Below, piece by piece: positions 28,456 through 53,406 of a DNA stretch of 64,000 nucleotides. Where the stretch lies: positions 62,001-126,000 of IMG/VR virus record IMGVR_UViG_3300032268_000832. One strand, written 5' to 3'. Every line of letters starts with the position of its first letter. Position 1 is the stretch's first letter. The notes below the pieces were generated by a model. The model was not told where the DNA came from, made no database searches, and saw only the letters and a program-made list of their open reading frames with translations. The translations under genes and the position numbers were made by a program.

Positions 28456-30243
28456 ATGCCTTTTAGAACAAAATTAGACTTTTCAAGTAATAGACAAGTT
28501 AAACAATTTGAGAAAACAAAAACGATTTTATCGGGTGGTACATCATTTGGTTTAACATTTAACGATTTAACAACAGGACCAAACCCTTTAACAAGTGGTG
28601 AAACAACTAGTCAATCATTTGTTGCTAGTACATTCTCTGGAAACAGTGCGACAACAGTTTTCAATTGGTTTAACCCAGCAATGGCTTTGGCTGAACCTTA
28701 TTTTTCTGCGTTAACACCTTCAAACTCAGCGACAACACAAACAGTTGATTCTGTTTTTGGTGTTAGTAGCACAACGGTAATTGATGGGAACACAGTAGCG
28801 CTATCTTATTCTGGTGTTGGTTTTGATATAACAGCTATAGCTATGTATAGTTTAGGTGGTGGTGCTTATTCTGGTACAGTTGAAACCGAAGAATTGGTTT
28901 TTTATTCTGCTACTAGTTTAGATTATACAGGTAGAACTATATGGGTTGATGTTTCTGGAATGACTAGAACTGAAAGACTTATCGTGACTAACAGTCCACA
29001 AATTGGTTATGTTTTAACATGTAATGATTCCGAAGGTATGGCAACATGGAGCCCAGTTACTGGTGTTACTATTAGTGGTGGGTCGATATTATGGTCTTCT
29101 GGTACTGGTACTTATTCTTTAGCAGCTAAAAATCATGGTTCTGTAGCTAGTGGAGATTATTCAGTCGCTTATGGTTTTGGAACGATAGCTAGCGGTAATT
29201 ACTCACATACGGAAGGTTATTTAACTGGAGCTGGTGTTTATTCACACGCTGAAGGTTATTCTACAGAAGCTAAAGGTGATGCATCACATGCTGAAGGTAA
29301 AGAATCAATTGCTAATGGTGATTATTCACATGCTGAAGGTAGCGGTACAACTGCTGATGGTGATTATTCACATGCTGAAGGTGTTGGTAATTTTGCTATC
29401 GGTATTGGTAGTCATGCTGAAGGTGGGTATAGTTTTAAAACTGGGTATTTACCAACTACTGCAACAACTGATAGTTCACACGCTGAAGGTGTTGGAACAA
29501 TAGCTAGTGGTGTTGGTAGCCATGCTGAATGTTACAACACTAAAGCAACTGGTGATGCATCACATGCTGAAGGTGGTGGTACAACTGCTAGTGGTGAATA
29601 TTCACATTCTGAAGGTTTTTTTACTATAGCTAGAGGCAATAATTCACATGCTGAAGGTTCAAATACTATAGCTAGTGGTAGTACAACACATGCTGAGGGT
29701 CAAGGGACAATAGCTAATGGTGATGCTAGTCATGCTGAAGGTTGGTATACGAGAGCGACTGGTACAACATCACACGCTGAAGGTTGGAATACGATAGCTA
29801 GTGGTTTTGCATCACATTCTGAAGGTTTTTTTACTATAGCTAGTAATACTGGTTCACACGCTGAAGGTTCTGGGACAACAGCTAGTGGTATTGCTAGTCA
29901 TGCTGAAGGTGGTGCAACAATAGCTAGCGGTAATTATTCACATGCTAGTGGTTCAGGTTCAACAGCTAGTGGTAATTATTCATTTGTTGGTGGGTTAAAT
30001 TCTAGGGCTTTAGCTGATTTTTCTTTTGTGCATGGTGAGCAGTCAGTTGTTGATAGCGGTGCGACGAATTCAATAGTATTAGGTGCTGGTATTTCAGGTA
30101 CTACTTCAGATACTTTATATACTAATACTTTAAATTTACAGTCAGTACTTGTTGCCGCTGATAACGCAGCAGCTATAGGTCTTGGTTTAGAAGTTGGTAC
30201 AGTTTACAGAACATCAGCAGGTCAATTAATGATTAGATATTAA
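28456..30243 (+). CDS. Fibre/adhesin with YadA-head-like SHAEG repeats
   Basis: About 18 ~14-aa repeats (A.G..SHAEG..T.); C-terminal ADNAAA.GLGLEVGTVYRT motif. Confidence 0.75.
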   Translation: MPFRTKLDFSSNRQVKQFEKTKTILSGGTSFGLTFNDLTTGPNPLTSGETTSQSFVASTFSGNSATTVFNWFNPAMALAEPYFSALTPSNSATTQTVDSVFGVSSTTVIDGNTVALSYSGVGFDITAIAMYSLGGGAYSGTVETEELVFYSATSLDYTGRTIWVDVSGMTRTERLIVTNSPQIGYVLTCNDSEGMATWSPVTGVTISGGSILWSSGTGTYSLAAKNHGSVASGDYSVAYGFGTIASGNYSHTEGYLTGAGVYSHAEGYSTEAKGDASHAEGKESIANGDYSHAEGSGTTADGDYSHAEGVGNFAIGIGSHAEGGYSFKTGYLPTTATTDSSHAEGVGTIASGVGSHAECYNTKATGDASHAEGGGTTASGEYSHSEGFFTIARGNNSHAEGSNTIASGSTTHAEGQGTIANGDASHAEGWYTRATGTTSHAEGWNTIASGFASHSEGFFTIASNTGSHAEGSGTTASGIASHAEGGATIASGNYSHASGSGSTASGNYSFVGGLNSRALADFSFVHGEQSVVDSGATNSIVLGAGISGTTSDTLYTNTLNLQSVLVAADNAAAIGLGLEVGTVYRTSAGQLMIRY

Positions 30244-30253
30244 TAAAAATAAA

Positions 30254-32119
30254 ATGGGAAATATTAAAAATTTTAACTTCGACAAACTAAAATTACAAAT
30301 CTCTAATAGTGATTATTGGGATTTTTATTTGGCCAATGATGAAACATCAGGTGGTTGTGATTCGTTGTTGTCAGGTTCATGTTTTGTTGTTTGGTATGAT
30401 TTTAATAACCCAGATACGTTTTTAAGCGGTTCTACTAACAACATACATAGTCTTGTTAGTTGGTCTGGGGCCACAAATTCTGGTTATACGTTAAACACAA
30501 TAGGTCTTACTGGTATTGATAACGGTTTGATAACTTTTGATAAACAAAGCGGTGATACAACGAACCAAGCATTATTATCAGCATTAACAACTAGCACTTT
30601 AGTAATAGAATCTGGTGACAATGGTTTAATTATGAATAGGGTTACTGGAACAACATCTGGTTTAACGTATACTTTATTACCTACATCTGGTCCTGAAGGT
30701 GAATATATTCAATTTTTAGGTGGTTTTTATCAAGGATTCTTTAAGTTAGATGGTTACACTTATGAAGTATTACCTACTAGAGTAAATCAATCATGGGGTG
30801 CTGAATTTTGGTTAAAACCTGAGGATATTGACCCAGTAGGAACAACACTTAATGACTTATACCCTAATAATAAAGGTTTTTTCTTTTATATGGGTACTAG
30901 AGCTGAAAACAAATTTTGGAATCAATTTTACGGTGCTGATACAGGTTGTACTAGCGCGTGTACTGCAACCGCGTGTACTAGTGGAGAAACCGTTAGTGAA
31001 TGGTGTACAATACCTAAAGAAACAGACATTACAATTGTGGGTGATTTTGGAATCGGAATACCTTTATCACCACCTCAAGTTACAATTGATTTAATAACAA
31101 ATCAATTCCTTATATATGGTAGAGGTTCTGGTCGAAAAAATTTTGAAACGTATACTGGTGACACTGGTAGTTTAGTTATACACGATGAAAGTCATGAAAT
31201 ATATAACCCTAATTGTAGATGTAGTAGATGTAATGGTCCTATGGATGGTTTGGGTTCTAAGCATGTTTGTAATTATGATGGAAAAGGAATAGCTGTTGCT
31301 AGAACTAGAATGGTGATTTCAAATGAAAATAACCCATTTTTAGTATACGGTAGAGCAGCACTAAGTGGTGGTTGTTCAACTTATTGTCATGGCCCTAACG
31401 ATGGTTTTGGTAATCAAACAGTACATTCATTTAGTGGTTTTTCTAAACCTATGACTGAATTAGATTATAAATTAGACATAATAGATAATGCTTTAGGGTT
31501 CAGAATTACTGATGATGGTAAAATAGGTTATAGGTTATTAACTGTAACTGGCGGTTGTCAAACAATTAACAACGAAAGAGTATATGTTAGTGGAATCACT
31601 ATTGAAGAAAAATACTCGCTACCAGATATGGTTAATTTCGATGAATGGAATTATATTGTTATTAAATTTGTAACAGATTATAAAGATGATTGTGATTTAA
31701 AAACAGCATCTAGGCGTAAGGGTAAACTTATGTTTTATGTAAACGCTAAACTTAAATTTGTTGTTAACGATTTTGATGAATTTATCGCTAAAAGACTTCA
31801 AGAATATAAGGATAAACAAATTGGTGTTCCTTTTAACTTTAGTCTTGGTGGTGGTTCTCAAGGTCTTATGGAAAGTCAGACCTTTGATGGGTTAGACCCA
31901 AGAGACAGGGATTTACCAATCGAAACAAATTTTGCTGGTACTTTTGTTGGTTCTATTTCTCAATTTAAATATAATATATGTGAATTGAAATATTGTAATA
32001 TAGTAGAAAATTACAATGCTGGGTTAAACCAATATGGGTTAAGTGCAACAAATTATTTGTTAACTGAAAACGAATTTGATATAGTGACTGAAGACGATGA
32101 AAATATTTCGTTAGAATAG
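30254..32119 (+). CDS. Virion protein with LamG/ConA-like fold and Cys-rich inserts
   Basis: WGAEFWLKP, WNYIVIKF, GKLMFYVNAKL, FVGSISQFKY; C-terminal LLTE...IVTED. Confidence 0.55.
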   Translation: MGNIKNFNFDKLKLQISNSDYWDFYLANDETSGGCDSLLSGSCFVVWYDFNNPDTFLSGSTNNIHSLVSWSGATNSGYTLNTIGLTGIDNGLITFDKQSGDTTNQALLSALTTSTLVIESGDNGLIMNRVTGTTSGLTYTLLPTSGPEGEYIQFLGGFYQGFFKLDGYTYEVLPTRVNQSWGAEFWLKPEDIDPVGTTLNDLYPNNKGFFFYMGTRAENKFWNQFYGADTGCTSACTATACTSGETVSEWCTIPKETDITIVGDFGIGIPLSPPQVTIDLITNQFLIYGRGSGRKNFETYTGDTGSLVIHDESHEIYNPNCRCSRCNGPMDGLGSKHVCNYDGKGIAVARTRMVISNENNPFLVYGRAALSGGCSTYCHGPNDGFGNQTVHSFSGFSKPMTELDYKLDIIDNALGFRITDDGKIGYRLLTVTGGCQTINNERVYVSGITIEEKYSLPDMVNFDEWNYIVIKFVTDYKDDCDLKTASRRKGKLMFYVNAKLKFVVNDFDEFIAKRLQEYKDKQIGVPFNFSLGGGSQGLMESQTFDGLDPRDRDLPIETNFAGTFVGSISQFKYNICELKYCNIVENYNAGLNQYGLSATNYLLTENEFDIVTEDDENISLE

Positions 32120-32129
32120 AAAAAATTTA

Positions 32130-32138
32130 ATATTTATA
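32130..32138 (+). promoter_or_regulatory. Putative late promoter ATATTTATA
   Basis: 14 nt upstream of ATG 32153. Confidence 0.65.
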
Positions 32139-32152
32139 TAAAAACACATAAA

Positions 32153-33535
32153 ATGCCAAATAGAAAAATAAGTCAATTACAAGCAAACGCTAATCTAACA
32201 GTTAGTGATATATTCCCTATTGTTAACAGTGGGACAACAAAAAAACAAGACATACAAGGGTTATTAAATTTTTTAACACCTTATTTTAGTGGTAACACAG
32301 AACTTTATATCACAGGTGGTACATATTCTGCTGGTACTGCTGTGTTTACCAACAGCACTGGCGGTACATTTAGCGTTTCTGGGTTTAGTACTGGTAGTTC
32401 ATTTACTGGAGGTACGGTATCTGGTGCAACTAGATTTACTAACGGATTAACAGCAAGTACAATATCAGCTACTACATATCAAAATTTACCATCATTTACT
32501 GGAGGTACGGTATCTGGAGCAACTAGATTTACCAACGGATTAACAGCGACTACAATATCAGCTACTACATATCAAAATTTACCTTTAGATATTAGAGTAA
32601 CTGGTGGTACTTATGATGAAAATAGTCGTGTTGCCACATTCACTAACAACACTGGTGGTACATTTGAAGTTCCTGGTTTTTATAAACCTTTATGGTATGC
32701 TGAACCTAGTTCAGCACCTGGCGCCTCACCAATTGTGGCTGGTACTAACAGTATTGCAATTGGTGATAGTGCAAATGCATCGGCTGAACATATGTTTGTT
32801 GTTGGTAATAGTGCTGGTGTTGCGGCTAATGGTTCTGCTTTCTCTAATTTTATTGGGACTTCTGCTGGTCGTGATGCTGGTGAATCTTATTATTCTAACT
32901 TTATTGGTAGAGAAGCTGGTGATGGGTCTAATGGTTCTAATCAATCTAATTTTATTGGGTATCAAGCTGGTTATAGGGCTACAAATGCTAGAAATTCTAA
33001 TTTTTTAGGTAATAGCGCTGGTATTAGAACCGATGTTGCTGAATACTGTAATTTTATTGGATATCAGGTAGCATCTGGGGCTACTAAGACTAGATATTCA
33101 ACATTTATTGGATATCAAGCTGGTTATAATACTAATTCAGATTATTCTATTATAATCGGTCACAAAGCTGGTTTAAATTCAGCTGGTAGTGTTAGTGACA
33201 ATAACATTATCATAGGTACTAATATAACATTACCACCAAATACTAAACGTCAAATTAACATTGGTGGTATATTGTTTGGTGCAAATGTTTACAATAACAC
33301 TGAAACTGAACCTATTTATTCAGCTAGAACAGATGGTGCTATTGGTATAAATGTTGTTGAACCACGAGCTAATTTACATATAGGTCCATCAACAACAGAC
33401 CAAGCTCTTATGAGACTTGAAGTTGGACCAGCACCTTCAAGTCCAAATGACGGTGATATTTGGTTAGAAAGTAATACTTTAACTGGTTTAAAAATAAGAA
33501 TAAGTGGTGTAACAAGAACAATAAATATAACTTAA
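32153..33535 (+). CDS. Fibre protein with 17-aa SNFxG..AG beta-helix repeats
   Basis: N-terminal KISQL motif, TGGT modules, SNFIGYQAG repeats. Confidence 0.7.
   Translation: MPNRKISQLQANANLTVSDIFPIVNSGTTKKQDIQGLLNFLTPYFSGNTELYITGGTYSAGTAVFTNSTGGTFSVSGFSTGSSFTGGTVSGATRFTNGLTASTISATTYQNLPSFTGGTVSGATRFTNGLTATTISATTYQNLPLDIRVTGGTYDENSRVATFTNNTGGTFEVPGFYKPLWYAEPSSAPGASPIVAGTNSIAIGDSANASAEHMFVVGNSAGVAANGSAFSNFIGTSAGRDAGESYYSNFIGREAGDGSNGSNQSNFIGYQAGYRATNARNSNFLGNSAGIRTDVAEYCNFIGYQVASGATKTRYSTFIGYQAGYNTNSDYSIIIGHKAGLNSAGSVSDNNIIIGTNITLPPNTKRQINIGGILFGANVYNNTETEPIYSARTDGAIGINVVEPRANLHIGPSTTDQALMRLEVGPAPSSPNDGDIWLESNTLTGLKIRISGVTRTINIT
32399..32583 (+). repeat. In-frame tandem duplication, 93 bp period
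   Basis: 32399-32490 vs 32492-32583, 4 mismatches by hand. Confidence 0.9.
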
Positions 33536-33580
33536 AATTATTTTTATAATTATAATAAAACAAATAAAATAATTAAAAAT

Positions 33581-33952
33581 ATGGAATTCTCAATAAATAA
33601 AAACTCTACACTTCCTGTGTTAAAATTAGAATTAATACAGGACGGTAGAAACGATTTTCAAAAGTTTCACGAAAAAGTGCAAAACGCTAGCATTTATTTT
33701 ACTATGACAGATGTTATCACAGGTGTTAAACGTATAGCAAAAAAACCTACTGGAATTGAACAAGTAGAACCAACTAATTGTGTTGGTGATGAATTTTATC
33801 TAACTTATCAATTTACTGAAAGAGATTCTTCAGTATCTGGTAGATATGTTGGTCAGTTTGAAATTGATTTTTTAGACGGTACTGGAACCCTTATAGTTCC
33901 AATTAGAGAAGAACTTTTTATTAACATTTTAGAAAGAACAATAAAAAAATAA
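33581..33952 (+). CDS. BppU-N-like Ig-fold adaptor protein
   Basis: FSINKNSTLPVLKLEL...IYFTM...GRYVGQFEIDF...LIVP. Confidence 0.55.
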   Translation: MEFSINKNSTLPVLKLELIQDGRNDFQKFHEKVQNASIYFTMTDVITGVKRIAKKPTGIEQVEPTNCVGDEFYLTYQFTERDSSVSGRYVGQFEIDFLDGTGTLIVPIREELFINILERTIKK

Positions 33953-33984
33953 CATTAAAAACTTGCTTTTTTAAAAATAAAATC

Positions 33985-34017
33985 ATAACTTTGTGTGTCA
34001 CAAAGTTATTTTTTTTT
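33985..34017 (+). terminator. Intrinsic terminator overlapping a sigmaA-like -7 element
   Basis: ataactttgtg-tgt-cacaaagttat perfect 11 bp stem then T run. Confidence 0.7.
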
Positions 34018-34030
34018 ACACTCATTTTAC

Positions 34031-34061: not shown

Positions 34062-34077
34062 CAATAAAAAATAAATT

Positions 34078-41776: not shown

Positions 41777-42838
41777 ATGATGCCAAAAGGATACATAACA
41801 AATATAGATATTACCAATGGTAAGATTGGTCCAGAGAGACGTCAAGAAATTCTTGACGGTATTGCTGACCAAGGTACTTTTTTACCTAGGGGTGTAAACG
41901 CTGAAGATATGGATTCTTCAGTTGTTGATTTTTTTAATTCTGAAGATGGTTTATCTATCAGTATTGATGGAGAGAAGGTACCTGTTATATTTTTAACGAT
42001 ACAAAGATGGAATGAATTTACTAAAACATGGAGTTTCACCGATAAGTATAAAAATATAAGCATGCCATTTATAACAATACTTAGAAAACCAGATATACAA
42101 CAAGGTCAAAATCAAGCTGGTTTATGGAACATCCCAGGTCGTCGTACTTACACTTATATGAAAGTACCAACATGGGATGGTGCTAGAAGTGGTGTTGATT
42201 TATACAAAGTACCACAACCAGTCTCAGTTGATTTAACTTATGAGATTAGAATCTTTACAACTAAAATGAAAGACTTAAATTTATTTAATACAGCTATTCA
42301 ATTAGCCTTTCAATCTAGACAATGTTATATAAACGTAAAAGGTCATCCGATGCCATTGCATTTAGAGTCTATAGGTGATGAGAGTAATATTGATGACTTT
42401 GAAAATAAAAGATTTTATGTTCAAACTTTTGAAGTGACTTTATTGGGTTATTTGTTAGATGAATCTCAATATGAGGTAATTCCAACTATAAATAGAACTG
42501 TAATGGCTTTAGAAATTGATGAGAGAAAAATATTTAACGATGTTTTATTTGATGCGTCTAGAAAAGATAATATAGCTAATTATGCTTTTATTTTTAAACC
42601 TAGGTCTAATAATCAATTTAGTTTTACTTTACAATATGATGTAAACTTTACTCAATTAATAGATGTTAAGAATATATCTAGAATAACAATTATATCTAAT
42701 GGTTCAACGATATTTGATGGTACAATAATGAACACACCTTTAATATTAAGTGCAAATGATATTATAACAATAAAAGTCACTAAAAACTATTTAGCTGTAA
42801 GTGAATTTAAATTAGTAGGAACAACAATTACATCATAA
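41777..42838 (+). CDS. Tail terminator/sheath stabiliser (T4 gp15-like)
   Basis: VPVI...RW...MPFITI...P.SVDLTYEIRIFT...F.VTLLGYL. Confidence 0.65.
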   Translation: MMPKGYITNIDITNGKIGPERRQEILDGIADQGTFLPRGVNAEDMDSSVVDFFNSEDGLSISIDGEKVPVIFLTIQRWNEFTKTWSFTDKYKNISMPFITILRKPDIQQGQNQAGLWNIPGRRTYTYMKVPTWDGARSGVDLYKVPQPVSVDLTYEIRIFTTKMKDLNLFNTAIQLAFQSRQCYINVKGHPMPLHLESIGDESNIDDFENKRFYVQTFEVTLLGYLLDESQYEVIPTINRTVMALEIDERKIFNDVLFDASRKDNIANYAFIFKPRSNNQFSFTLQYDVNFTQLIDVKNISRITIISNGSTIFDGTIMNTPLILSANDIITIKVTKNYLAVSEFKLVGTTITS

Positions 42839-44892: not shown

Positions 44893-46872
44893 ATGAGTTT
44901 AAGAAGACTGATGTTATTTACACTGACATCAAAAATAAGAAATATTATTCTATTGTTTAAAAATAGAATTTTTTCAGATTTAGGTAGATTTGAAGCTGAG
45001 AATTGTTTGTACACACAACTTAATGGTTTAGAATATAAGGGGTTACTAGATTCGGCAAGTTTAGTTATAACACCAAACGGTTATGAAGAGACTAAATTAT
45101 TTAGTGTTGTTCCAAATGATGGAACAACAGATTTTGCAGTTACAAGAGCTACAGTAGCAACAAGGGTTAATTCACAGGGTCTTCTAGAAACCGTTCCGTA
45201 TAACCAACTTCAATATACATCTCAATTAGAAAACTCAACATTTACAAAAAGAAATGTAACAATAACTAATAATACACTAACCGACCCTAACAACAGTAAC
45301 ACAGCTTATAATATAGTAGGTAACTCAGGTGTTACTTATAGTTACGCTGGAAGTACTTCAATAACATCGATAATTTCAGAAGGGTTTGCAAATACATTAT
45401 TCAATCCATTTATCGGTAATGCTTCAGTTTATTTAAAATACAATGGTTTAAATAGTGTCAGATTTATTTTATCGGTTTCAACTTCTCTAAACCTTACTAC
45501 ATTAGTTTTTGTTCAAGTAAATTTACAATCAGGTGAAATCACAAATTCTCAACTTACGTCATCTGATGGTTTAACAAATATTTCTAATAGTTTTATTGAA
45601 AATGTAGGTAATGGTTGGTTTAGAATAGGATTTAAGATACTCACAGCGTCATCAACTACAAACAATAGATTGGCAGTATCTCTAGGTGACACAATAAAAA
45701 CAACAGGTAATGGTGTGGATGGTGTGTATATTTGGGGTTTGCAACTTACAGTTGGGGGTAATGTACAAGACTATTGGCCAACAAGTACAAGAATAAATAT
45801 ACCTAGATTGGATTATAGTGGTACCACATGTCCGACACTCCTTACTGAACCACAACTTACAAATAGTTGGACAAATAACAATATTACATCTGGTTATACA
45901 AATAACACAAACGCTATTCAAGTGGCAACAATACCTAATGCATTTGGGGAAGGTTTTGATGGGTTTGATTATAATTTCAGTAGTGGAACGTTTTTGTCGA
46001 GCACTTTTAGTATAAGACAATTTGATACTAGAGGGTTTCCAATTCAACGTTTGTGTTTTTTTGTTAAAAATCCATCATCAGATTTTTTTGGAATAAACTA
46101 CACAAACGCAACACAAGTTATTTATCAATTTAGTACATTAACAGCAAGAGATTATTATTTAAGTGGTAATACAGGTACTATTACTAAAATAAATGAAAAC
46201 ACATATGCGTTATACATGCATATGGATAACGCCTCAACTGGACAATTTTCTCAAGTTAGGGTAGGGTTTGTAGGGGACTTGACTAGTCAAGTCCCAATTA
46301 CGGGTAGTACTATTTTAGGGTTAGGGTACCAACAAGGTGCGGCAGCAGGTTCTACACTACCTCTAACCTATAACCCAATAACAACAGGTGCCTCATCAGT
46401 TACAAAAAACGCTGAAACACTTACTAAGGTAGGTATTGAAAATCTTATAGGTCAAACAGAAGGTACTTTGTTAGTTAAGGGGTACCAGTTTGATAGAGGG
46501 ATTGTTTTAAGAATAAGAAACAGTGGAAGTACAACACTTAACAGAATCGCAATATTCTGTGCAAGTAATGATGGAAAAGTTGAATGCGCAATAACTAAAA
46601 ATGGTACAGCTGTAAATTCAACTGTTCTGACATCACCAATTGTTTTTAAAAAAAACATTGCCTTTGTTTATTCAAATTTAGGTTTTAAAGTTTTTATTAA
46701 TGGTGCTATAATTTTTACACACACATACGCAACACAAACCGATTTTACCGCAGTACTAAATGAACTAAACTTAGGTTCAGTAAGCGAAAGAGCTACAGCT
46801 AGATTTGAATTAGTAGCTTTATGGAAAACACAATTAACAGATGAACAAGTAATACAATTAACCACATTATGA
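44893..46872 (+). CDS. Fibre/spike protein with carbohydrate-binding and LamG-like domains
   Basis: TRATVATRVNSQGLLE, VGNGWFRI, YIWGLQL, PRLDYSG.TCPTLL.EPQ.TN, GQTEGTL, LTDEQVIQLT. Confidence 0.65.
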   Translation: MSLRRLMLFTLTSKIRNIILLFKNRIFSDLGRFEAENCLYTQLNGLEYKGLLDSASLVITPNGYEETKLFSVVPNDGTTDFAVTRATVATRVNSQGLLETVPYNQLQYTSQLENSTFTKRNVTITNNTLTDPNNSNTAYNIVGNSGVTYSYAGSTSITSIISEGFANTLFNPFIGNASVYLKYNGLNSVRFILSVSTSLNLTTLVFVQVNLQSGEITNSQLTSSDGLTNISNSFIENVGNGWFRIGFKILTASSTTNNRLAVSLGDTIKTTGNGVDGVYIWGLQLTVGGNVQDYWPTSTRINIPRLDYSGTTCPTLLTEPQLTNSWTNNNITSGYTNNTNAIQVATIPNAFGEGFDGFDYNFSSGTFLSSTFSIRQFDTRGFPIQRLCFFVKNPSSDFFGINYTNATQVIYQFSTLTARDYYLSGNTGTITKINENTYALYMHMDNASTGQFSQVRVGFVGDLTSQVPITGSTILGLGYQQGAAAGSTLPLTYNPITTGASSVTKNAETLTKVGIENLIGQTEGTLLVKGYQFDRGIVLRIRNSGSTTLNRIAIFCASNDGKVECAITKNGTAVNSTVLTSPIVFKKNIAFVYSNLGFKVFINGAIIFTHTYATQTDFTAVLNELNLGSVSERATARFELVALWKTQLTDEQVIQLTTL

Positions 46873-47204: not shown

Positions 47205-50200
47205 ATGGGACAAAAAATTAATTCAACACCAATAAGTTCAATATATTACCAAACTGGTAATGGTACACCATCACATATAGCTACTATAGGTTGTGTATAT
47301 ACTGACGTTGATACTGGGAATATGTATATAAATAAAGATGGTTTAGTTAATTGGGTACCTTTTTCAGATTCAAGTTCATCAATATTTGGAAATTATTTAC
47401 CATTGTCTGGTGGTACTGTATATGGTAATACTATCTTTACTAGCGGTCTTACTGTTAATTATTTAGATTTTGATACTACACCAATAGTTCCATCACCAAC
47501 TGGTGGTACACTATATTTTGATTCAACTGAAAACGCTTTATCCTATAAACCTGTTACAAATCAAAATGATGTTACGGTAAATTTGGGTCAAGAAAGTTTA
47601 ATTAAAATTTACAATAATTTAGGATACCAAATCAACAATGGTCAAGTTTTACATATTACAGGGTCTACTATAACAGGTGGTACACCAACAGTTGCGTTGG
47701 CTAACGCATCAAAATTAGGAACCGTATTTACTGTAGGTTTAGCACAAACTTCAGGTGTTGCAACTCACGATATACCTAGCGGACAATATGGTTTTATGAC
47801 AAACTTTGGCGTAGTTAGAGATTTAAACACATCAGCGTTTACCGCAGGGCAAGAGGTATTTTTATCTGATACTATTGATGGGGCTTTAACCAACGACCCA
47901 AATGATATTGCATACACTTCAAGGGTTTCAACCGTTGGTTATTGTTTGGAATCAAATGCAACAACAGGTAAAATATTAGTTCAAATTACTAATGAAAACG
48001 CTGTACAAAGTTTGACACAACTACAAGTAAATGTGTTGTTGGGTAATACAATATCGACAGGTGTTTTTAATTTTACTGGAATAACGTTGGCGTCAAGCAA
48101 CACGTTTAACGTTGCACCAGTAGATGCTTGGTTGGTTGACAATACAACAAATCCTTTAGTTCCAGAAGTTCTTTATGTTAAGTATTCTGGTCAAACAAAT
48201 ATTCCATCACTTTATTATAATACGGCAACAGAAACATACCTGTTACTTACTAGTGCTGGTACTATAACACAACAGACAACATTTCCAACACCGCAACAAA
48301 GAAGACAAAATATTTATTTGGGTAAAATGGGTCATGGTAATAGAACTAGTCTTATTAACGCATTTAACGAACCCGATTTAGACGTATCACCATTATCACA
48401 ACTTCGTGATATGTTTACACCGATTAAATTAATAAATGAAAATATTTATCCAAGCCCTAATTCAAATCTAACATTTAATACTAGTAGTGGAACTTTATTT
48501 GGGTTAGGTATTGGGTTTACGACAAATCAACTTAACCCAAGTAGTATAAGTGTATCAGGAAACTCACCAACAACATTTCAATATAGAACACAAACAGGTG
48601 GTACAGCAACCAATAGAACTACAATAGACCCAGCAAATTATGATTTAAATGGTGTAGTCACTTCAATTGGAAGTCCAGCAAAACAAGCGACAAACCAAAG
48701 AATATATTTGTTACAAAATGGTCAATTTAGGATACAATATGGTCAAACTAAATATGCTGATTTAACAACAGCAATTGCAGCGGTTAATACAGAAGCATTT
48801 ACAACATTTTCAAACTTTAGGGATAACGCAGTATTAATTGCAATATTATCTGTTAGGTCAGATGCAACAATTTTAAGTAATATAGCACAAGCCAAAATTA
48901 CGTTTGCATCAAAATTTGGTGAAACAGTAGGTGGAACTGGTGGTATTTCAACCACTACACTTCAACAAGCGTATGATAATTCAGCAACACCTGAGATTGT
49001 AACAAATTCGGCAGAAGGTGCATTATCTATTAAAAATGGTACTGGTAATGCTGATAACGTAACTAGATTACTTGAGGGTCTTAATGCTGCTGGAAATGCA
49101 ACTAGTTTTATTAGAGCTGATGGTGATATATCTGGAACAACAATACAAACAAATAATTTAACAGCTACTACAATTTCAGCTACAACAGTAACAGCAAATA
49201 ATCTTAATGGTTTATCGTCTTCAGCAACAACCGCGGTAAATGTTAATATCACAGAAATTACAAATGCACCTATTGATTATAATATAACTTTTGTAGGTAG
49301 TGTCTCGGGTAGTAATGGTTTAGGTGTTGATTCAACCACTTTAACTTATAATCCAAGTATTAGTACTTTTAAAACCCCAGTTATGTCTGCATCATCAACA
49401 ATAAATTCTGGTACTCTTACAACAACTACAATAAATGGTTCTAATAACCAATCAGGTATCGTTGTTGTTGGTAGTAACACAGTTGGTGGGTCTGGTTATG
49501 TAGATTTCATAAAAGTCACAAATACGTCTGCTGGTGCAACAAATATAAATAAAACAATTCGTGTAAACAACACAGGTGCTATAGAATTCATCAACAGCAC
49601 ATATCTTGCAACAACATTTAGTATTTCAGATAATGGTATCATAACAATTACTAGCCCAGCAAGCGTTACAAGTAATTCTGCGACTAACAATGCGTTGAAT
49701 GTTGGAACTAAAGGTCAATTATTTGATGATGGTAACTTTCATATACACAGTAATAGTGGTTCTGTATGGATTAATTCATTGGATGGTAATCCTATTCGTT
49801 TAGGTACACAAACCAATACAGGTAACTCGGCTGTTATTGTAGATACAACTACTGTTGGACATAGTTTCTTCACAAAAGTTCAGAGTGGTTTTAACGTGGC
49901 TTTTGGTACCGAGATAACCATGGATAACTTAAAGATTCGTATTAACGGAACTGGTGGTTCTGGTGGTCTTGTACAAGCTGGTGCTGTGAGTGGTAGTTTT
50001 GCTGCTTATACAACTTTAGTTGGTAATGTTGCTGGTGCAGCACTACAAGGTGATACTAATTCTGGTGGTATTACATTTACAACAACTTATCAAAACATAA
50101 GTGGTGTTCAGAAGACTTTATCCGCTGGTGGTGACACTACAACGTTACACCTTATTGATACCACAAACAGTAGAATATATAGAATAACAGCGATACACTG

Positions 50201-50246
50201 TCAAGGCACAACTGGTGGTTACACTAGTATTGAACGTATGTCATAA
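47205..50246 (+). CDS. Large Thr/Ser/Gly-rich fibre/appendage protein
   Basis: 1013 aa; YLPLSGGT, GVATHDI..G..GF...GVV.DLNTS decoration-like domain. Confidence 0.65.
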   Translation: MGQKINSTPISSIYYQTGNGTPSHIATIGCVYTDVDTGNMYINKDGLVNWVPFSDSSSSIFGNYLPLSGGTVYGNTIFTSGLTVNYLDFDTTPIVPSPTGGTLYFDSTENALSYKPVTNQNDVTVNLGQESLIKIYNNLGYQINNGQVLHITGSTITGGTPTVALANASKLGTVFTVGLAQTSGVATHDIPSGQYGFMTNFGVVRDLNTSAFTAGQEVFLSDTIDGALTNDPNDIAYTSRVSTVGYCLESNATTGKILVQITNENAVQSLTQLQVNVLLGNTISTGVFNFTGITLASSNTFNVAPVDAWLVDNTTNPLVPEVLYVKYSGQTNIPSLYYNTATETYLLLTSAGTITQQTTFPTPQQRRQNIYLGKMGHGNRTSLINAFNEPDLDVSPLSQLRDMFTPIKLINENIYPSPNSNLTFNTSSGTLFGLGIGFTTNQLNPSSISVSGNSPTTFQYRTQTGGTATNRTTIDPANYDLNGVVTSIGSPAKQATNQRIYLLQNGQFRIQYGQTKYADLTTAIAAVNTEAFTTFSNFRDNAVLIAILSVRSDATILSNIAQAKITFASKFGETVGGTGGISTTTLQQAYDNSATPEIVTNSAEGALSIKNGTGNADNVTRLLEGLNAAGNATSFIRADGDISGTTIQTNNLTATTISATTVTANNLNGLSSSATTAVNVNITEITNAPIDYNITFVGSVSGSNGLGVDSTTLTYNPSISTFKTPVMSASSTINSGTLTTTTINGSNNQSGIVVVGSNTVGGSGYVDFIKVTNTSAGATNINKTIRVNNTGAIEFINSTYLATTFSISDNGIITITSPASVTSNSATNNALNVGTKGQLFDDGNFHIHSNSGSVWINSLDGNPIRLGTQTNTGNSAVIVDTTTVGHSFFTKVQSGFNVAFGTEITMDNLKIRINGTGGSGGLVQAGAVSGSFAAYTTLVGNVAGAALQGDTNSGGITFTTTYQNISGVQKTLSAGGDTTTLHLIDTTNSRIYRITAIHCQGTTGGYTSIERMS

Positions 50247-50500: not shown

Positions 50501-50550
50501 TATAAAACAAAACATTAAATTTAATAATATCACTTAAAAAGTAAAAAAAT

Positions 50551-53406
50551 ATGGCAACAAAAGTGTTCGTAAGTCCAGGGGTTTATACCTCAGAAAAAGA
50601 CTTATCATTTATTACACGTCAAATCGGTGTTACAACTTTAGGTTTAGTTGGGGAGACTACAATAGGTCCTGCATTTCAACCAATTTTTGTAGGCAATTAT
50701 GGCGAATTCCAATCTTTTTTTGGTGGCCAAAATGCTACTAGAGTAAAAGATAACGGTGCACCAAGATATGAATTACCTTATATCGCTAAATCGTATTTAT
50801 CTCAATCAAACCAATTATTCGTAACTAGAGTATTAGGGTTTTCTGGATATGATGCAGGTAAAGCATGGGGTATAACATTACAAGGTACATTAGACCCTGA
50901 TACTGTTGGGGTAACTTCATCAGGAACCACATATAGTCCTATAATTTCATATACAGCAATAACTGCTACTAATGAGGTTGTTAGTGTTGTTTCAAACGTA
51001 CCTTTAATTCAACAATTATATAATGATGGTACTTTAGTAAATCCATTGAATATATTGGGTACTTTCAGTGCTACAGGTAATGTCGCATCTATAGATGTAG
51101 AGTACAAAAAAACAGGTGCTACTTATAGTGGTGTATCATTTAATTTATTTGTTAATTCAATCGGTACTACTGGTTTATATACAACTGGTACAACAACAGG
51201 TGCTACAGTTACTTATTCTGGTTCAGCATATTCTGATGTTGAAAACAAGTTGGTAACTTTATTACGTTCTAGAGGTACAATAAATTCAGCTACACAGTTA
51301 CCTAACTTTGAAGTTAGTGCGGCTACAGGTAATTTAGGTTTTAACCCTACTTATACCGCTGCAAATAGTGACGCTTTAGGTGATTTCGCGTTGACTGGTA
51401 CATCTAATACTCAAGGTGCTTTTAGTTATGTATTATCGTTTGATAAAACAAAACAAAACTACATTACTAGAGTATTGGGTAGAGAAGCTCAAGATGGAAC
51501 AACAGCAATTTTTGTTGAAGAGTTCTATAACAATATGTTTACTGATTTAAACGCTGCTGAAAAAATAGCTGGTATTAATTTAAGTCTTGTGAATTATAGT
51601 GGAGAATTTTCTGATTATCAAAAAGAATACCAACCAGCAGTTACACCTTATGTAGTTTCTGAATTACGTGGTACTAACTTATTTAGATTATTTAGATTCT
51701 GGACAATATCAGACGGTAACGCTGCTAACGAACAATTTAAAATATCTATTAGAAATATTAATTTAGATTCTGGTGAATTTGATGTTGTTGTTAGAGGATT
51801 CTACGATACTGATGCTCAACCAACTGTATTGGAAACATTCAGTCGTTGTACTATGAGCCCAACATCTAATAATTACGTTGCTAGAAGAATAGGTACACTT
51901 GATGGTGAATACCCATCTAAATCATCTTATGTTCTTATTGAGATGGATACTGATTCAGATACTAGCGATATGGTTCCAGCTGGTTTCGTAGGTTTCCCAA
52001 TTAGAGATTACCAAGAAAATAGCAATACAACAGTTGTTAACCCTGCTATTGAGTATAAAAAAGCTTATGGTACATTTGAAAATAAACGTAAATATTATTT
52101 AGGTTTATCTGAAACTGTAGGTATTGATTCGGATTTCTTTGATTATAAAGGGGTTCCTGTAGGACAAACTTATGATATGTGGACTGGTCTTACAAAAGGT
52201 TTCCATATGGACGTTAATGCTACTGGCGCTACAATCGACAATGTATTTGTTGTGATTAACAATAGTGGTGATACATATAATCCAATATTCTTATTTGATA
52301 CTGGTGACGCTGCGTTTAACAGTACTGCTGTAGCAGATGCTAATAATCCATATAATAAAATATATGCGCGTAAATTTACATTTGCACCTTATGGTGGTTT
52401 TGATGGATGGGATATATACAGAACTAGAAGAAGTAACTTAGACTCATTCTTAATCAACGGTACTAATGGTGTTAAAGGTTTAAATAGTGGTGCTTTTACT
52501 AATAGAACACTTACAAACGGTGATTTAGGTATTAATTCAGATTACTACGCATATTTAGAAGCTATTTGGACATTTAAAAACCCAGAAGCAGTTAATATTA
52601 ATGTGTTTGCAACTCCAGGTATTGATACGTTTGATAACAGTAACTTAATTGAGGCTGCTATTGAAATGGTTGAAACTGATAGAGCTGACTCATTATATAT
52701 TTTAACAACCCCAGATACAAATGCTGGTGGTGAGGTTATGTCAGCTGAAGAAATTTCAGATTTCTATTCTGATGGTTCTTTCGATAGTAACTACTCATGT
52801 ACTTATTGGCCATGGATTCAAGTAAACGATACTGAAAATAATGTTTACATTTGGATGCCGCCAACAAGAGATGTAGTTAGAAACATCGCGTTAACTGACA
52901 ACATTGCATTCCCATGGTTTGCTGTTGCTGGTATTCAAAGAGGTGATGTTGACTGTATTCAAGCTCGTAAAAAACTTACTCTTTCTGAAAGAGATGCGTT
53001 ATACGAAAATAGAGTTAACCCAATTGCAACTTTCACATCAGATGGTGTTAAAATCTGGGGTAATAAAACTCTTCAAGTTAAAGAATCTGCTCTTGACAGA
53101 ATCAACGTTAGAAGACTATTGTTACAAGCTAGAAAACTTATCTCTGCTGTTTCTATCAGATTGTTATTTGAACAAAACGATAGTGTTGTAAGAAATCAAT
53201 TCTTATCATTGGTTAACCCAATCTTAGATAATATTAGAGCTGAAAGAGGTCTTACAGACTTTAGAGTGGTTCTTTCAAATGACCCAGAAGATATCGATAG
53301 AAATCAACTTACAGGTCAGATATTCTTGAAACCAACTAGAGCGTTAGAGTTCATCCAATTAGAGTTCGTAATTATGAACACTGGTGCATCTTTCGATAAC
53401 ATCTAA
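50551..53406 (+). CDS. Contractile tail sheath protein (gp18-like)
   Basis: SPGVYTSEKD, G.T..GPAF.P, YWPW, PWFAVAG..RG, NPI, WGNKTL, RINVRRL, PTRALEFI. Confidence 0.95.
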   Translation: MATKVFVSPGVYTSEKDLSFITRQIGVTTLGLVGETTIGPAFQPIFVGNYGEFQSFFGGQNATRVKDNGAPRYELPYIAKSYLSQSNQLFVTRVLGFSGYDAGKAWGITLQGTLDPDTVGVTSSGTTYSPIISYTAITATNEVVSVVSNVPLIQQLYNDGTLVNPLNILGTFSATGNVASIDVEYKKTGATYSGVSFNLFVNSIGTTGLYTTGTTTGATVTYSGSAYSDVENKLVTLLRSRGTINSATQLPNFEVSAATGNLGFNPTYTAANSDALGDFALTGTSNTQGAFSYVLSFDKTKQNYITRVLGREAQDGTTAIFVEEFYNNMFTDLNAAEKIAGINLSLVNYSGEFSDYQKEYQPAVTPYVVSELRGTNLFRLFRFWTISDGNAANEQFKISIRNINLDSGEFDVVVRGFYDTDAQPTVLETFSRCTMSPTSNNYVARRIGTLDGEYPSKSSYVLIEMDTDSDTSDMVPAGFVGFPIRDYQENSNTTVVNPAIEYKKAYGTFENKRKYYLGLSETVGIDSDFFDYKGVPVGQTYDMWTGLTKGFHMDVNATGATIDNVFVVINNSGDTYNPIFLFDTGDAAFNSTAVADANNPYNKIYARKFTFAPYGGFDGWDIYRTRRSNLDSFLINGTNGVKGLNSGAFTNRTLTNGDLGINSDYYAYLEAIWTFKNPEAVNINVFATPGIDTFDNSNLIEAAIEMVETDRADSLYILTTPDTNAGGEVMSAEEISDFYSDGSFDSNYSCTYWPWIQVNDTENNVYIWMPPTRDVVRNIALTDNIAFPWFAVAGIQRGDVDCIQARKKLTLSERDALYENRVNPIATFTSDGVKIWGNKTLQVKESALDRINVRRLLLQARKLISAVSIRLLFEQNDSVVRNQFLSLVNPILDNIRAERGLTDFRVVLSNDPEDIDRNQLTGQIFLKPTRALEFIQLEFVIMNTGASFDNI

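What the first reader, a model, noticed from the sequence alone, without database searches (positions are those of the whole stretch)
28456..53406. Candidate O-glycosylation sequon [S/T]-G-x-T on exposed virion proteins: a possible phage-encoded virion glycosylation system
Seen (hand counts of [ST]GxT): 28456 = 12, 30254 = 10, 32153 = 12, 42838 = 12, 44893 = 6, 47205 = 9, sheath 50551 = 7, partial 1-509 = 2, about 70 in total. In 32153, 12 of 15 [ST]G dipeptides continue xT; in 30254, 10 of 20 do, and four more are [ST]GxC. [ST]AxT variants (SATT, TAST, SACT) are also common. Internal controls: the Gly/Ser-rich tape measure has 0 of about 15 [ST]G; tube, spike, neck, the 62036 fragment and helicase have 0; PolB has 1 in 1253 aa. 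Sheath motifs cluster outside the conserved N- and C-terminal core. The motif occurs in unrelated folds, so it is not one repeat family. Inference: it is the acceptor signal for the soluble glycosyltransferases at 4.8-25.6 kb, giving a fucosylated, methylated glycan coat on the particle. Established context: virion glycosylation is known in chloroviruses/mimiviruses and some mycobacteriophages; I know of no sequon like this but cannot exclude prior description.
Basis: partly seen in the sequence, partly recalled or inferred. Interest (0 to 1): 0.92.

Follow-up and report, generated by a model that had tools for sequence, protein, structure and literature searches.

The report
Thr-rich motif in jumbo-phage tail proteins
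A short motif, Ser/Thr-Gly-x-Thr, really is about four times too frequent in the tail fibres and sheath of this uncultured jumbo phage, but it looks more like a structural building block of those proteins than a proven sugar-attachment signal.

Summary
The seven proteins hold 68 [ST]GxT against 17 expected from local shuffles. The other 49 ORFs hold 7 against 6.7. The signal is at protein level and directional, and G can be replaced by A. It holds across the whole lineage, the aquatic 'moraphages' that probably infect Bacteroidota, where six protein families give O/E of 3.3-7.2. T4, Mel-JY01, immuto and phi92 virion proteins, and 943 other phage ORFs, give an O/E of about 1-2.

The motif is the core of unnamed fibre modules (VTGGTY...NNTGGTF and FTGGTVSGxT...ATTYxNLP). 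These are shared by 32153, 42838 and 47205 and by more than 1,800 metagenomic proteins. Masking the modules still leaves 44 against 12.

The glycosyltransferase island is real. It has a GDP-fucose pathway, GT2, GT11 and FkbM genes and no membrane segments. Two core GTs and a hypervariable GT run sit beside the fibre genes in all relatives.

Nothing links the motif to glycosylation. This phage's major capsid protein has 1 motif among 9 [ST]G. Position 4 is T, not S. Cytoplasmic proteins do not avoid the motif.

My best reading is structural grammar of fibre and decoration domains (0.55). The sequon reading remains open (about 0.15).

The parts
28456..30243 (+). Fibre protein of 595 aa with 12 [ST]GxT
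   Evidence: Counts. Matches phrog_25468. Lineage-wide O/E for this family is 3.35.
29323..30045 (+). SHAEG-type 14-residue repeats (about residues 290-530), resembling the YadA/BpaC head of trimeric autotransporter adhesins
   Evidence: PDB 7o23 (BpaC) at E 1.5e-8. Pfam YadA_head scores 13.5 bits, below its cut-off of 25. Homologous stretches occur in fibres of Flavobacterium, Verrucomicrobia, crAss-like and Acinetobacter phages.
30254..32119 (+). Conserved virion-associated protein of 621 aa with 10 motifs, a Cys-rich stretch and no family assignment
   Evidence: No hit in Pfam, PHROGs or PDB. There are 49 distinct homologues with O/E 7.2. Sites 131, 230 and 446 are kept in 40-43 of 49, while 99 alignment columns carry the motif somewhere.
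32153..33535 (+). Fibre protein of 460 aa with 12 motifs, a paralogue of 42838
   Evidence: BLASTP E 5e-55 to 42838. The AF2 model has pLDDT 69, with a confident beta-helix at residues 200-340.
32306..32686 (+). Module array modB-modA-modA-modB (VTGGTY..FTNNTGGTFxVxGF and FTGGTVSGxTxFTNGLTAxTISATTYxNLP), holding 8 of the 12 motifs
   Evidence: HMM hits at E 1e-13 to 1e-19. Module alignment A3. More than 1,882 metagenomic proteins carry these modules.
42838..44886 (+). Fibre protein of 682 aa with 12 motifs
43066..43524 (+). Array of modB and modA modules (residues 77-229), holding 7 motifs
   Evidence: HMM hits.
44893..46872 (+). Tail protein of 659 aa with 6 motifs
   Evidence: phrog_5939 'tail protein' at E 5e-20. 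Observed 6 against 1.4 expected, p 0.0025.
47205..50246 (+). Tail fibre protein of 1013 aa with 9 motifs
   Evidence: phrog_16641 at E 4e-18. Two modA hits. Observed 9 against 4.1 expected, p 0.02.
50551..53406 (+). Tail sheath of 951 aa with 7 motifs
   Evidence: PF04984 at 33.8 bits and phrog_23 at E 1e-59. Foldseek match to T4 sheath chains at E 5e-8.
50905..51360 (+). Sheath insertion domain (residues 119-270), carrying sites 124, 188, 212 and 216 plus variable sites in orthologues
   Evidence: Sites 212 and 216 are kept in 62-66 of 66 orthologues, and sites 124 and 188 in 6-14 of 66. AF2 pLDDT is 74-93 here.
52183..52275 (+). Second sheath insertion (residues 545-575), carrying sites 545, 558 and 572
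   Evidence: Kept in 64, 43 and 60 of 66 orthologues. At site 558 the G is replaced by A in 18.
3..518 (-). N-terminal 172 aa of a 468-aa protein that runs off the window. It has 2 motifs here and 3 in the full protein.
   Evidence: for the window part. Full protein read from L295:10010-11413. No PHROG hit.
24323..25582 (-). Core GT-B glycosyltransferase of 419 aa, 3 kb from the fibre genes
   Evidence: phrog_7162 'glycosyltransferase' at E 4e-42. Identity of 53-100% in 80 IMG/VR loci, always in the same synteny.
19720..21753 (-). Core two-domain glycosyltransferase: GT2 (GT-A) N-terminus plus a GT4-like C-terminus
   Evidence: PF13712 at E 3e-33. The family profile hits GT-A and GT-B structures weakly. 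Present in nearly all relatives.
4778..19727 (-). Variable glycan island with GT2 (4778, 15869, 17324, 18040), GT11 (12738, 16588), GT17-like (11196), DUF5672 (15253), FkbM (14629) and Methyltransf_24 (10606) methyltransferases, a GT4-like gene (5578) and PhoH (7782)
   Evidence: Pfam and NCBIfam scans. No membrane segment found by hydropathy scan. Gene content differs between relatives.
8688..10606 (-). GDP-L-fucose pathway: GDP-mannose 4,6-dehydratase (9626-10606) and a GDP-L-fucose-synthase-like reductase/epimerase (8688-9623)
   Evidence: TIGR01472 at E 1e-113 and NF047922 at E 3e-71. Both score below the curated cut-offs but are the best matches. Also PF16363.

Best explanation
[ST]-[G/A]-x-T is a lineage-specific piece of structural 'grammar'. 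It belongs to the all-beta fibre, spike and decoration domains that moraphage-type jumbo phages use on their tails.

The motif is the conserved core of at least two unnamed fibre modules, plus variants of YadA-like and NxFIG beta-helix repeats. modB is a three-strand meander, VTGGTY-xx-GTxxFTNN-TGGT-FxVxGF. modA is a shaft unit, FTGGTV-SGxT-xFTNGLTAxTISATTYxNLP.

A small residue (G or A) and a beta-branched hydroxyl residue (T) mark strand ends, tight turns and loop-to-strand entries. Such modules are shuffled among fibre genes and have even been inserted into the sheath, which would spread the motif over several virion proteins.

On this reading the adjacent glycosyltransferase island makes a fucose-containing, methylated glycan for some other target, or for a protein target not defined by this motif. 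Candidates are host envelope glycans, phage DNA and virion proteins.

Shown: the enrichment, its specificity, the modules, their spread, the structural contexts in AF2 models, and the identity of the GT genes. Inferred: that structure alone explains the enrichment, and what the GT island acts on.
For: - The motif is the invariant core of repeat modules. In 34 copies of modA, G3, G4 and G37 are invariant and T2, T5, G8, T10, T36 and T39 are at least 90% conserved.
- 32153, 42838 and 47205 share these modules.
- More than 1,882 metagenomic proteins carry them. In the best 120, 66% of [ST]G continue xT, and TGGT dominates.
- A relative's fibre of 1624 aa has 63 motifs and ends in a Peptidase_S74 chaperone domain.
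- A relative's sheath of 1317 aa has 34 motifs, which suggests modules inserted into a sheath.
- Position 4 is T and hardly ever S, V or I. Position 2 is only G or A. The reverse and shifted patterns are at or below expectation.
- Hydrophobicity alternates upstream and peaks at -1, +4 and +8, as in strand-turn-strand.
- AF2 places T188-GA-T191 of the sheath at an exact two-residue hairpin turn. It places NTGG|TF of 32153 at a loop-to-strand entry and VTGGTY inside strand 1 of a meander.
- Four sheath sites are kept in 60-66 of 66 orthologues, and a fifth (558) in 43, while x varies.
- The major capsid protein of this same phage has 1 motif among 9 [ST]G.
- Non-virion proteins neither gain nor avoid the motif: 7 against 6.7 in the window, and 21 against 23.3 in 150 lineage representatives.
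Against: - Fibres of T4, Mel-JY01, immuto and phi92 do not show the enrichment, so this is not a general property of beta-rich tail proteins.
- Only 19 of 68 motifs lie in modA or modB. After masking those and the SHAEG region, 44 remain against 11.9 expected.
- 30254, 44893 and the sheath share no detectable homology with the module fibres.
- In the 30254 family the motif occupies 99 different alignment columns, yet the count stays at 9-13 per protein. That pattern looks like selection on density rather than on fixed turns.
- AF2 shows three different local contexts, not one.
- The x position is often a bulky hydrophobic residue (L, F, V, I), which is unusual for a tight turn.
- The motif-rich genes are syntenic with two core GTs throughout the lineage.
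Confidence: 0.55

Rival explanations
1. Sequon reading, as proposed by the first reader. [ST]-[G/A]-x-T, probably presented on a beta-hairpin, is the acceptor site for a conserved phage protein O-glycosyltransferase (candidates 24323 or 19720). The hypervariable GT2, GT11 and methyltransferase genes then build a strain-specific, fucose-containing glycan on tail fibres and sheath decoration domains in the cytoplasm before assembly.
For: - Enrichment of 3.3-7.2 fold is confined to six or seven exposed tail protein families across the lineage. Tube, tape measure, baseplate-like and replication proteins have none.
- It survives masking of the repeats.
- In the 30254 family and the sheath insertion, sites turn over while their number is maintained.
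- Two core GTs and a variable GT run lie beside the fibre cluster in about 80 relatives.
- The island's products have no membrane segments, and it encodes the GDP-fucose pathway.
- Four GT orthogroups are core genes of moraphages (PMC12619734).
- Precedents for virus-encoded cytoplasmic virion glycosylation exist in chloroviruses (PMC5408694) and in mycobacteriophages (as summarised in PMC12619734).
Against: - There is no direct evidence of any glycan.
- The major capsid protein has 1 of 9.
- T strongly outnumbers S at position 4, and position 2 needs G or A, both typical of packing constraints.
- The motif is invariant inside repeat modules in which the neighbouring glycines are equally invariant.
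- Cytoplasmic phage proteins, including the GTs themselves, do not avoid it.
- phi92 carries a 25%-identical homologue of 24323 plus three more GTs, but has only 18 against 9.3 motifs in its virion proteins.
- TGGT-type fibres occur in other large-phage contigs with no GT within 10 kb.
- No protein-O-GT family such as GT41, O-FucT or the TibC type was detected.
Confidence: 0.15
2. Common-descent reading. All or most copies descend from one short hairpin unit that has been duplicated, diverged and recombined into many tail genes. The excess would then reflect module ancestry, not ongoing selection for the tetrapeptide.
For: - Modules are shared between paralogues and between phage lineages.
- Weak low-complexity similarities link 32153 with 28456, 47205 and the sheath at E 1e-4 to 1e-8 when composition correction is off.
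- One relative has a sheath that contains TGGT-rich inserts.
Against: - 49 of 68 copies lie outside detectable modules.
- Flanks outside the modules share only a weak hydrophobic pattern.
- 30254 homologues at 27-30% identity keep 9-13 motifs at different positions, which needs continuing selection or repeated gain.
Confidence: 0.15
3. Ligand-binding reading. The hydroxyl-rich motif forms repeated shallow sites that bind host surface polysaccharide, a lectin-like adhesion along fibres and sheath decorations.
For: - The motif is restricted to outward-facing tail proteins.
- One carrier resembles YadA-type adhesin heads.
- The variable parts of the fibres carry most of the turnover.
Against: - No carbohydrate-binding family or fold was detected.
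- The motif is just as conserved in shaft-like modules that are unlikely to be binding tips.
- This reading was not tested further.
Confidence: 0.08
4. Composition artefact. Proteins rich in G, S and T give many [ST]GxT by chance.
For: The seven proteins hold 7-15% each of G, S and T.
Against: - Local and global shuffles expect 12-17 against 44-68 observed.
- The Gly-rich tape measure has 0 of 15 [ST]G.
- Patterns of the same composition, such as the reverse motif, [ST]G..T and [ST].GT, have O/E of 0.6-1.0.
Confidence: 0.02

Closest known systems
Mycobacteriophage virion O-glycosylation (Freeman et al. 2023, as summarised in PMC12619734)
   Same: Phage-encoded glycosyltransferases that act in the cytoplasm on virion proteins. 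This is the only established case of virion glycosylation in tailed phages.
   Different: There the glycans sit on the C-termini of the capsid and tail tube subunits. Here the tube has no motif, the capsid protein has 1 of 9, no glycan has been shown, and the candidate sites are internal beta-structure motifs in fibres and sheath.
Chlorovirus (PBCV-1 Vp54) and giant-virus autonomous glycosylation (PMC5408694)
   Same: Virus-encoded soluble GTs, sugar-nucleotide synthesis, fucose-rich and methylated glycans, and attachment at non-canonical sites.
   Different: Those are N-linked glycans on the major capsid protein of eukaryotic viruses, and the glycans were demonstrated chemically. Here the capsid protein lacks the motif and nothing has been demonstrated.
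Cell-wall synthesis and modification gene clusters of large cyanomyoviruses (S-SCSM2R, S-SCSM1, P-SSM2; PMC12801897)
   Same: A dozen or so GTs, including GT2 and GT11, with NDP-sugar epimerases or dehydratases in a lytic myovirus of 200 kb or more. The target is unknown.
   Different: Those clusters are interpreted as modifying the host surface or DNA, and no motif in virion proteins has been reported. Here two of the GTs are core genes fixed next to the fibre cluster.
YadA-like head repeats of trimeric autotransporter adhesins (for example BpaC, PDB 7o23)
   Same: Residues 290-530 of 28456 align with the 14-residue left-handed beta-roll repeats at E 1.5e-8.
   Different: Adhesin repeats read [ST]Gx[ND]. 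The phage version is SHAEG-based and yields [ST]GxT only in some turns. Pfam YadA_head scores below its threshold.
Phage tail fibres with a C-terminal intramolecular chaperone (endosialidase or Peptidase_S74 type)
   Same: Relatives' module-rich fibres, such as the 1624-aa protein of L022, end in Peptidase_S74 at E 7e-18.
   Different: The window's own 32153 and 42838 have no S74 domain. The modA and modB modules have no Pfam model.
Autotransporter heptosyltransferases (AAH/TibC acting on AIDA-I/TibA) - recalled from memory, not tested here
   Same: Cytoplasmic O-glycosylation of Ser/Thr in beta-helix adhesin repeats. The enzyme is said to recognise a strand-loop-strand structure rather than a linear sequon. 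This is a working analogy for how a structural motif could also serve as an acceptor.
   Different: No homologue of that enzyme family was found in the window. This is a resemblance of mechanism only.

Membership tests
Phage virion glycosylation system (mycobacteriophage type) | Phage-encoded glycosyltransferases | tested here: met
   GT2, GT11, GT17-like and GT-B genes.
Phage virion glycosylation system (mycobacteriophage type) | Glycan demonstrated on virion proteins by mass spectrometry or staining | not testable with these tools
   The phage is uncultured and known only from metagenomes.
Phage virion glycosylation system (mycobacteriophage type) | Acceptor sites on the capsid and tail tube subunits | tested here: not met
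   Only the candidate motif was tested. The tube protein 53969 has 0 of 2 [ST]G. The major capsid protein, L295:15012-16838, has 1 of 9.
Giant-virus-style autonomous glycosylation | Virus-encoded sugar-nucleotide synthesis and soluble GTs | tested here: met
   GDP-mannose dehydratase and a GDP-fucose-synthase-like gene. No predicted membrane helix in the ORFs between 4 and 26 kb.
Giant-virus-style autonomous glycosylation | Glycans attached to the major capsid protein | not testable with these tools
   The capsid protein lacks the candidate motif, but its actual modification state is unknown.
Host O-antigen or capsule modification locus | Membrane components: initiating phosphoglycosyl transferase, flippase, polymerase or exporter, or Gtr-type proteins | tested here: not met
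   No such Pfam families and no membrane segments in the island. Host enzymes could supply these functions, so the function itself is not excluded.
Phage DNA glycosylation | A base hydroxymethylase plus a DNA glucosyltransferase | tested here: inconclusive
   No hydroxymethylase in the window. 11196 gives only a weak PF09198 (T4 beta-glucosyltransferase) match at E 0.0055. dUTPase, HD-domain and IMPDH-like genes lie among the GTs. The rest of the 306-kb genome was not examined.
Tail sheath (T4 gp18 family) | Sheath subtilisin-like and C-terminal domains, and the fold | tested here: met
   PF04984 scores 33.8 bits against a cut-off of 31.4. phrog_23 at E 1e-59. Foldseek match to T4 sheath chains at E 5e-8.
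YadA-like head repeat (trimeric autotransporter adhesin) | 14-residue beta-roll repeats that match the family model | tested here: inconclusive
   PDB 7o23 at E 1.5e-8, but Pfam YadA_head scores 13.5 bits against a cut-off of 25.
Moraphages (Perez-Hernandez et al. 2025) | Aquatic jumbo phage up to 307 kb, T4-like structural core, core GT orthogroups, PhoH and dUTPase | tested here: inconclusive
   The contig is 306,463 bp. PhoH, dUTPase, sheath, tube, family-B polymerase and GTs are present and match the paper's core list. No genome from the paper was compared directly.

The most novel reading that the evidence does not exclude
[ST]-[G/A]-x-T on exposed beta-hairpins is the first defined O-glycosylation sequon of a tailed phage. 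A core glycosyltransferase (24323 or the GT2-GT4 fusion 19720) would start the glycan on tail fibres and sheath decorations. The hypervariable GT, fucosyltransferase and methyltransferase island would diversify it between strains, like an O-antigen locus for the virion.
Probability: 0.15. Interest if true: 0.9.

Novelty: new member of a known kind. Interest (0 to 1): 0.5.

Why it matters
The lineage is abundant in fresh and marine waters. Hundreds of IMG/VR contigs and more than 1,800 metagenomic proteins carry these modules, and none has a Pfam name, a solved structure or a cultured representative.

Naming the modules and their TGGT signature gives a simple way to recognise tail fibres in such phages.

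The motif-rich tail genes always sit beside two core glycosyltransferases and a hypervariable glycan island. That is a concrete hypothesis which can be tested by cloning.

If the motif proves to be an acceptor site, it would be the first sequon for phage virion glycosylation. It would also explain why these phages carry a dozen sugar enzymes. If not, the target of the island remains an open question for a whole clade of jumbo phages.

Tried and rejected
- DNA-level word: rejected. Codons within the motif follow background usage.
- Composition artefact: rejected by global, 20-residue and 40-residue block shuffles and by same-composition control patterns.
- 'All tail fibres do this': rejected. 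T4, Mel-JY01, immuto and phi92 virion proteins, and 943 ORFs of Mel-JY01-like phages, give an O/E of about 1-2.
- 'It is all one repeat': rejected as a full explanation. Masking the modules leaves 44 against 11.9.
- Sequon avoidance in cytoplasmic proteins: an apparent two-fold depletion in pooled homologues disappeared when one representative per divergence bin was used, at 21 against 23.3.
- 'One type of beta-turn': AF2 shows at least three local contexts.
- Fold assignment: Foldseek against the PDB gave nothing for 32153 and only the sheath core for 50551. PDB sequence searches of 30254, 47205, 24323 and 19720 gave nothing useful.
- Pfam at E up to 10 gave no repeat family for the modules.
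- Cellular genomes: only 4 hits among 185,579 species, all on MAG contigs. A first attempt with a poorly conserved alignment failed.
- Cultured phages with the modules: none in INPHARED.
- Neighbourhood of the GT homologue in megaphage LR756501: no fibres there.
- A first attempt to reach this lineage's capsid gene through Mel-JY01's capsid protein returned only another clade. Walking left from the window's edge then found it.
- The Freeman et al. 2023 paper is not held in the library.

Full report
WHAT THE WINDOW IS

The window is bases 62,001-126,000 of IMG/VR contig IMGVR_UViG_3300032268_000832, which is 306,463 bp long. G+C is about 30%.

Its gene content is that of a T4-like myovirus: sheath, tube, tape measure, a family-B polymerase, PhoH and dUTPase, plus many glycosyltransferases. 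This content, and the contig size, fit the 'moraphages', a lineage of aquatic jumbo phages of up to 307 kb. Their predicted hosts are Bacteroidota, and four GT orthogroups belong to their core genome (PMC12619734). I did not compare the window directly with those published genomes.

THE OBSERVATION

- Motifs per protein: 12, 10, 12, 12, 6, 9 and 7 in the seven proteins, and 2 in the partial ORF at the left end.
- 32153 has 12 motifs among 15 [ST]G.
- 30254 has four [ST]GxC.
- The tape measure has 0 of 15 [ST]G, the 62036 fragment 0 of 12, and PolB 1.

The excess is not a matter of composition.
- Whole-protein shuffles expect 0.9-4 per protein.
- Shuffling inside 20- or 40-residue blocks expects 17.1 or 16.4 in total against 68 observed. 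No shuffle exceeded 33.
- The other 49 ORFs have 7 against 6.7.

The coupling is directional and specific.
- After [ST]G-x, T occurs in 68 of 158 cases (3.5 times background). After G preceded by any other residue, T is not enriched.
- SGxT is 6.4-fold and TGxT 3.5-fold over expectation, while [ST]GxS is near 1.2-1.5.
- Codons in the motif follow the proteins' general usage.

IS IT ONE REPEAT FAMILY?

Partly.
- 32153 and 42838 are paralogues at E 5e-55, and both share segments with 47205.
- They contain two modules whose core is the motif. modB is DIxVTGGTYxxGTxxFTNNTGGTFxVxGF. modA is FTGGTVSGxTxFTNGLTAxTISATTYxNLP.
- HMMs built from relatives place 19 of the 68 motifs in these modules.
- Residues 290-530 of 28456 are SHAEG repeats related to YadA/BpaC adhesin heads (PDB 7o23, E 1.5e-8).

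Masking all of this still leaves 44 motifs against 11.9 +/- 3.3 expected. SGxT (28 against 5.5) and SAxT (15 against 3.4) are among the strongest three-residue patterns, alongside the NFxG of a beta-helix repeat. 30254, 44893 and the sheath show no detectable homology to the module fibres.

The modules have no Pfam model. They are widespread in metagenomes and rare elsewhere.
- More than 1,882 metagenomic proteins match. In the best 120 of these, 2,941 of 4,463 [ST]G continue xT, and TGGT is by far the commonest form.
- No cultured-phage record carries them.
- Only four MAG contigs carry them among 185,579 species genomes.
- One relative's 1624-aa fibre has 63 motifs and ends in a Peptidase_S74 chaperone domain.
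- One relative's sheath is 1317 aa long with 34 motifs.

LINEAGE-WIDE PICTURE

I pooled distinct homologues from about 200 IMG/VR loci.
- Six families (28456, 30254, 32153, 42838, 47205 and the sheath) have O/E of 3.3-7.2, with 38-52% of [ST]G followed by xT.
- 44893 had too few homologues to score.
- Most other families sit at or below expectation, and none with more than a handful of sites approaches the six. This includes the GTs, polymerase, helicase, tube, tape measure and baseplate-like proteins.

Controls outside the lineage are flat or only weakly raised.

| Control set | Result |
|---|---|
| T4, 30 proteins | 18 against 16.2 (gp34: 0 of 18 [ST]G) |
| Mel-JY01 sheath homologue | 0 of 7 [ST]G |
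| Flavobacterium phage immuto, largest spike | 7 against 3.6 |
| phi92 virion proteins | 18 against 9.3 |
| 943 ORFs of Mel-JY01-like phages | 471 against 459 |

This is therefore not a general property of tail fibres.

CONSERVATION AND TURNOVER

In 66 distinct sheath orthologues (at least 68% identical), conservation differs by site.
- Sites 212, 216, 545 and 572 are kept in 60-66.
- Site 558 is kept in 43, with G replaced by A in 18 others.
- Sites 124 and 188 are kept in only 14 and 6.
- Other orthologues have extra sites, and all of them lie in the two insertion regions.

In 49 distinct 30254 homologues (27-100% identical), three sites are kept in 40-43. Yet 99 alignment columns carry the motif in some member, and the count stays mostly at 9-13 per protein.

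In that family the pattern is sharply specific.

| Pattern | O/E |
|---|---|
| [ST]GxT | 7.2 |
| [ST]AxT | 5.6 |
| [ST]GxS | 1.6 |
| [ST]Gx[VI] | 0.7 |
| T.G[ST] (reverse) | 0.6 |
| [ST]G..T | 1.0 |
| [^ST]GxT | 0.56 |

The flanks show alternating hydrophobicity upstream, with peaks at -1, +4 and +8.

STRUCTURE

Only monomer AF2 models were possible.

The sheath model is poor overall (pLDDT 51) but good for residues 101-350.
- T188-G-A-T191 is an exact two-residue hairpin turn.
- T207-G-L-Y210 is another hairpin turn.
- Residues 124-127 and 212-219 lie inside long strands.

The 32153 model has pLDDT 69.
- VTGGTY is strand 1 of a three-strand meander.
- S59-A-G-T62 is the hairpin turn.
- N-T-G-G is a loop, with the final T opening strand 3.
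- The modA region is unstructured in the monomer.
- Residues 200-340 form a confident beta-helix.

The motif therefore marks strand ends, turns and loop-to-strand entries, not one single geometry. Foldseek found no solved relative of the modules and confirmed only the T4-like sheath core.

THE GLYCOSYLTRANSFERASE ISLAND

The island is real. It contains:
- GDP-mannose 4,6-dehydratase and a GDP-L-fucose-synthase-like gene;
- four GT2 genes in the island (plus the GT2 domain of 19720), two GT11, one GT17-like gene and DUF5672;
- FkbM and Methyltransf_24 methyltransferases;
- weak GT4-like genes;
- a GT2-GT4 fusion (19720);
- a GT-B gene (24323; phrog_7162, E 4e-42).

A hydropathy scan found no membrane segment in any of these.

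In 80 relatives (24323 identity 53-100%) the gene order is conserved. It runs: polymerase, 33581, the fibre genes, a divergent junction, five small ORFs, 24323, an HD-domain gene, dUTPase, an IMPDH-like gene, 19720, and then a run of GT-sized ORFs whose content differs from phage to phage.

It fits any other glycan target equally well. I could not find a relative that has the motif but lacks the GTs, because only 10 kb on either side of a match can be read.

EVIDENCE THAT BEARS ON THE SEQUON IDEA

Walking left from the window's edge reached this phage's own head genes.
- The major head protein (609 aa; phrog_138, E 4e-66) has nine [ST]G and a single TGGT.
- The acidic scaffold-like protein has none.
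- The 468-aa protein that starts at the window's left end has three.

A 'glycan coat on the particle' through this motif is therefore not supported. If the motif is an acceptor at all, it is specific to the tail.

Other points also lean against the sequon.
- Non-virion proteins do not avoid the motif.
- phi92 carries a homologue of 24323 and three more GTs next to its tail genes, but shows only a weak excess.
- TGGT fibres occur in other large-phage contigs with no GT within 10 kb.
- T is strongly preferred over S at position 4, only a small residue is allowed at position 2, and the neighbouring glycines in the modules are invariant. These are what packing constraints would give.

VERDICT

The statement that it is not one repeat family is half right.

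The most economical explanation is that [ST]-[G/A]-x-T is the signature of a set of beta-structure building blocks peculiar to the fibres and decoration domains of these phages. These blocks would be spread by module shuffling and kept by structural selection (confidence 0.55).

That explanation does not fully account for three things: the absence of the motif from other phages' fibres, the site turnover at constant density in the 30254 family, and the three different structural contexts.

The glycosylation-sequon reading stays alive at about 0.15. It is cheaply testable by co-expressing 24323 or 19720 with a fibre fragment and weighing the product.

The target of the GT island is unresolved. 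Candidates are virion proteins, host envelope glycans (the usual reading for cyanomyovirus clusters; PMC12801897) and DNA.

Noticed in passing
window 19720-28394 and 28456-37839; loci L205-L284: The gene order is conserved across about 80 relatives. It runs PolB, 33581, fibre genes, a divergent junction, five small ORFs, GT-B 24323, an HD-domain gene, dUTPase, an IMPDH-like gene and the GT2-GT4 fusion 19720, followed by a hypervariable run of GT-sized ORFs. This resembles an O-antigen-style variable locus behind two core GTs.
   Followed up: partly
L016:17894-21846 (also L017 and L018): A sheath orthologue, 74% identical in the shared part, is 1317 aa long instead of 951 and holds 34 [ST]GxT. 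Fibre-type modules appear to have been inserted into a tail sheath.
   Followed up: no
phi92 NC_023693.1 102200-105376 (L291:40201-43377): Homologues of 24323 (25% identity) occur in phi92-like and rV5-like coliphages, in a block of four glycosyltransferases of unknown role near the tail genes. One is annotated as having a polypeptide GalNAc-transferase fold.
   Followed up: partly
L285:7989-10667; L288:10001-11446: TGGT-module fibres with 20 motifs in 450-481 aa also occur as isolated genes in contigs of other large phages. Their neighbours include NAPRTase, RNA ligase and Band_7 genes, and there is no GT within 10 kb. This suggests horizontal exchange of fibres between lineages.
   Followed up: partly
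window 30941-30991 and about 31214-31231 (30254 residues 230-246 and about 321-326): A Cys-rich stretch, TGCTSACTATACTSGET, and a CRCSRC cluster. Site 230 ([ST]G[CL]T) is kept in 43 of 49 homologues. This may be a metal or disulfide knot.
   Followed up: no
window 53969-54457 and 55759-56454: Two paralogues related to tail tube proteins (both match phrog_4542) lie downstream of the sheath.
   Followed up: no
window 4040-4768 and 7782-8663: A protein resembling sigma-70 region 2, and a PhoH-like ATPase, lie next to and inside the glycosyltransferase island.
   Followed up: no
L295:15012-19470 (contig bases about 53,000-57,500, just left of the window): The head module lies here: a major head protein (609 aa, phrog_138), a very acidic 412-aa scaffold-like protein and a head maturation protease. 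It is separated from the tail genes by the GT island and the replication genes.
   Followed up: partly
T4 gp36 residues 178-186 (L002:35869-36534): T4 gp36 contains SGDTMTGNL, which resembles the start of modA (FTGGTVSGxT). This may be a distant link between modA and classical tail-fibre shaft repeats.
   Followed up: no
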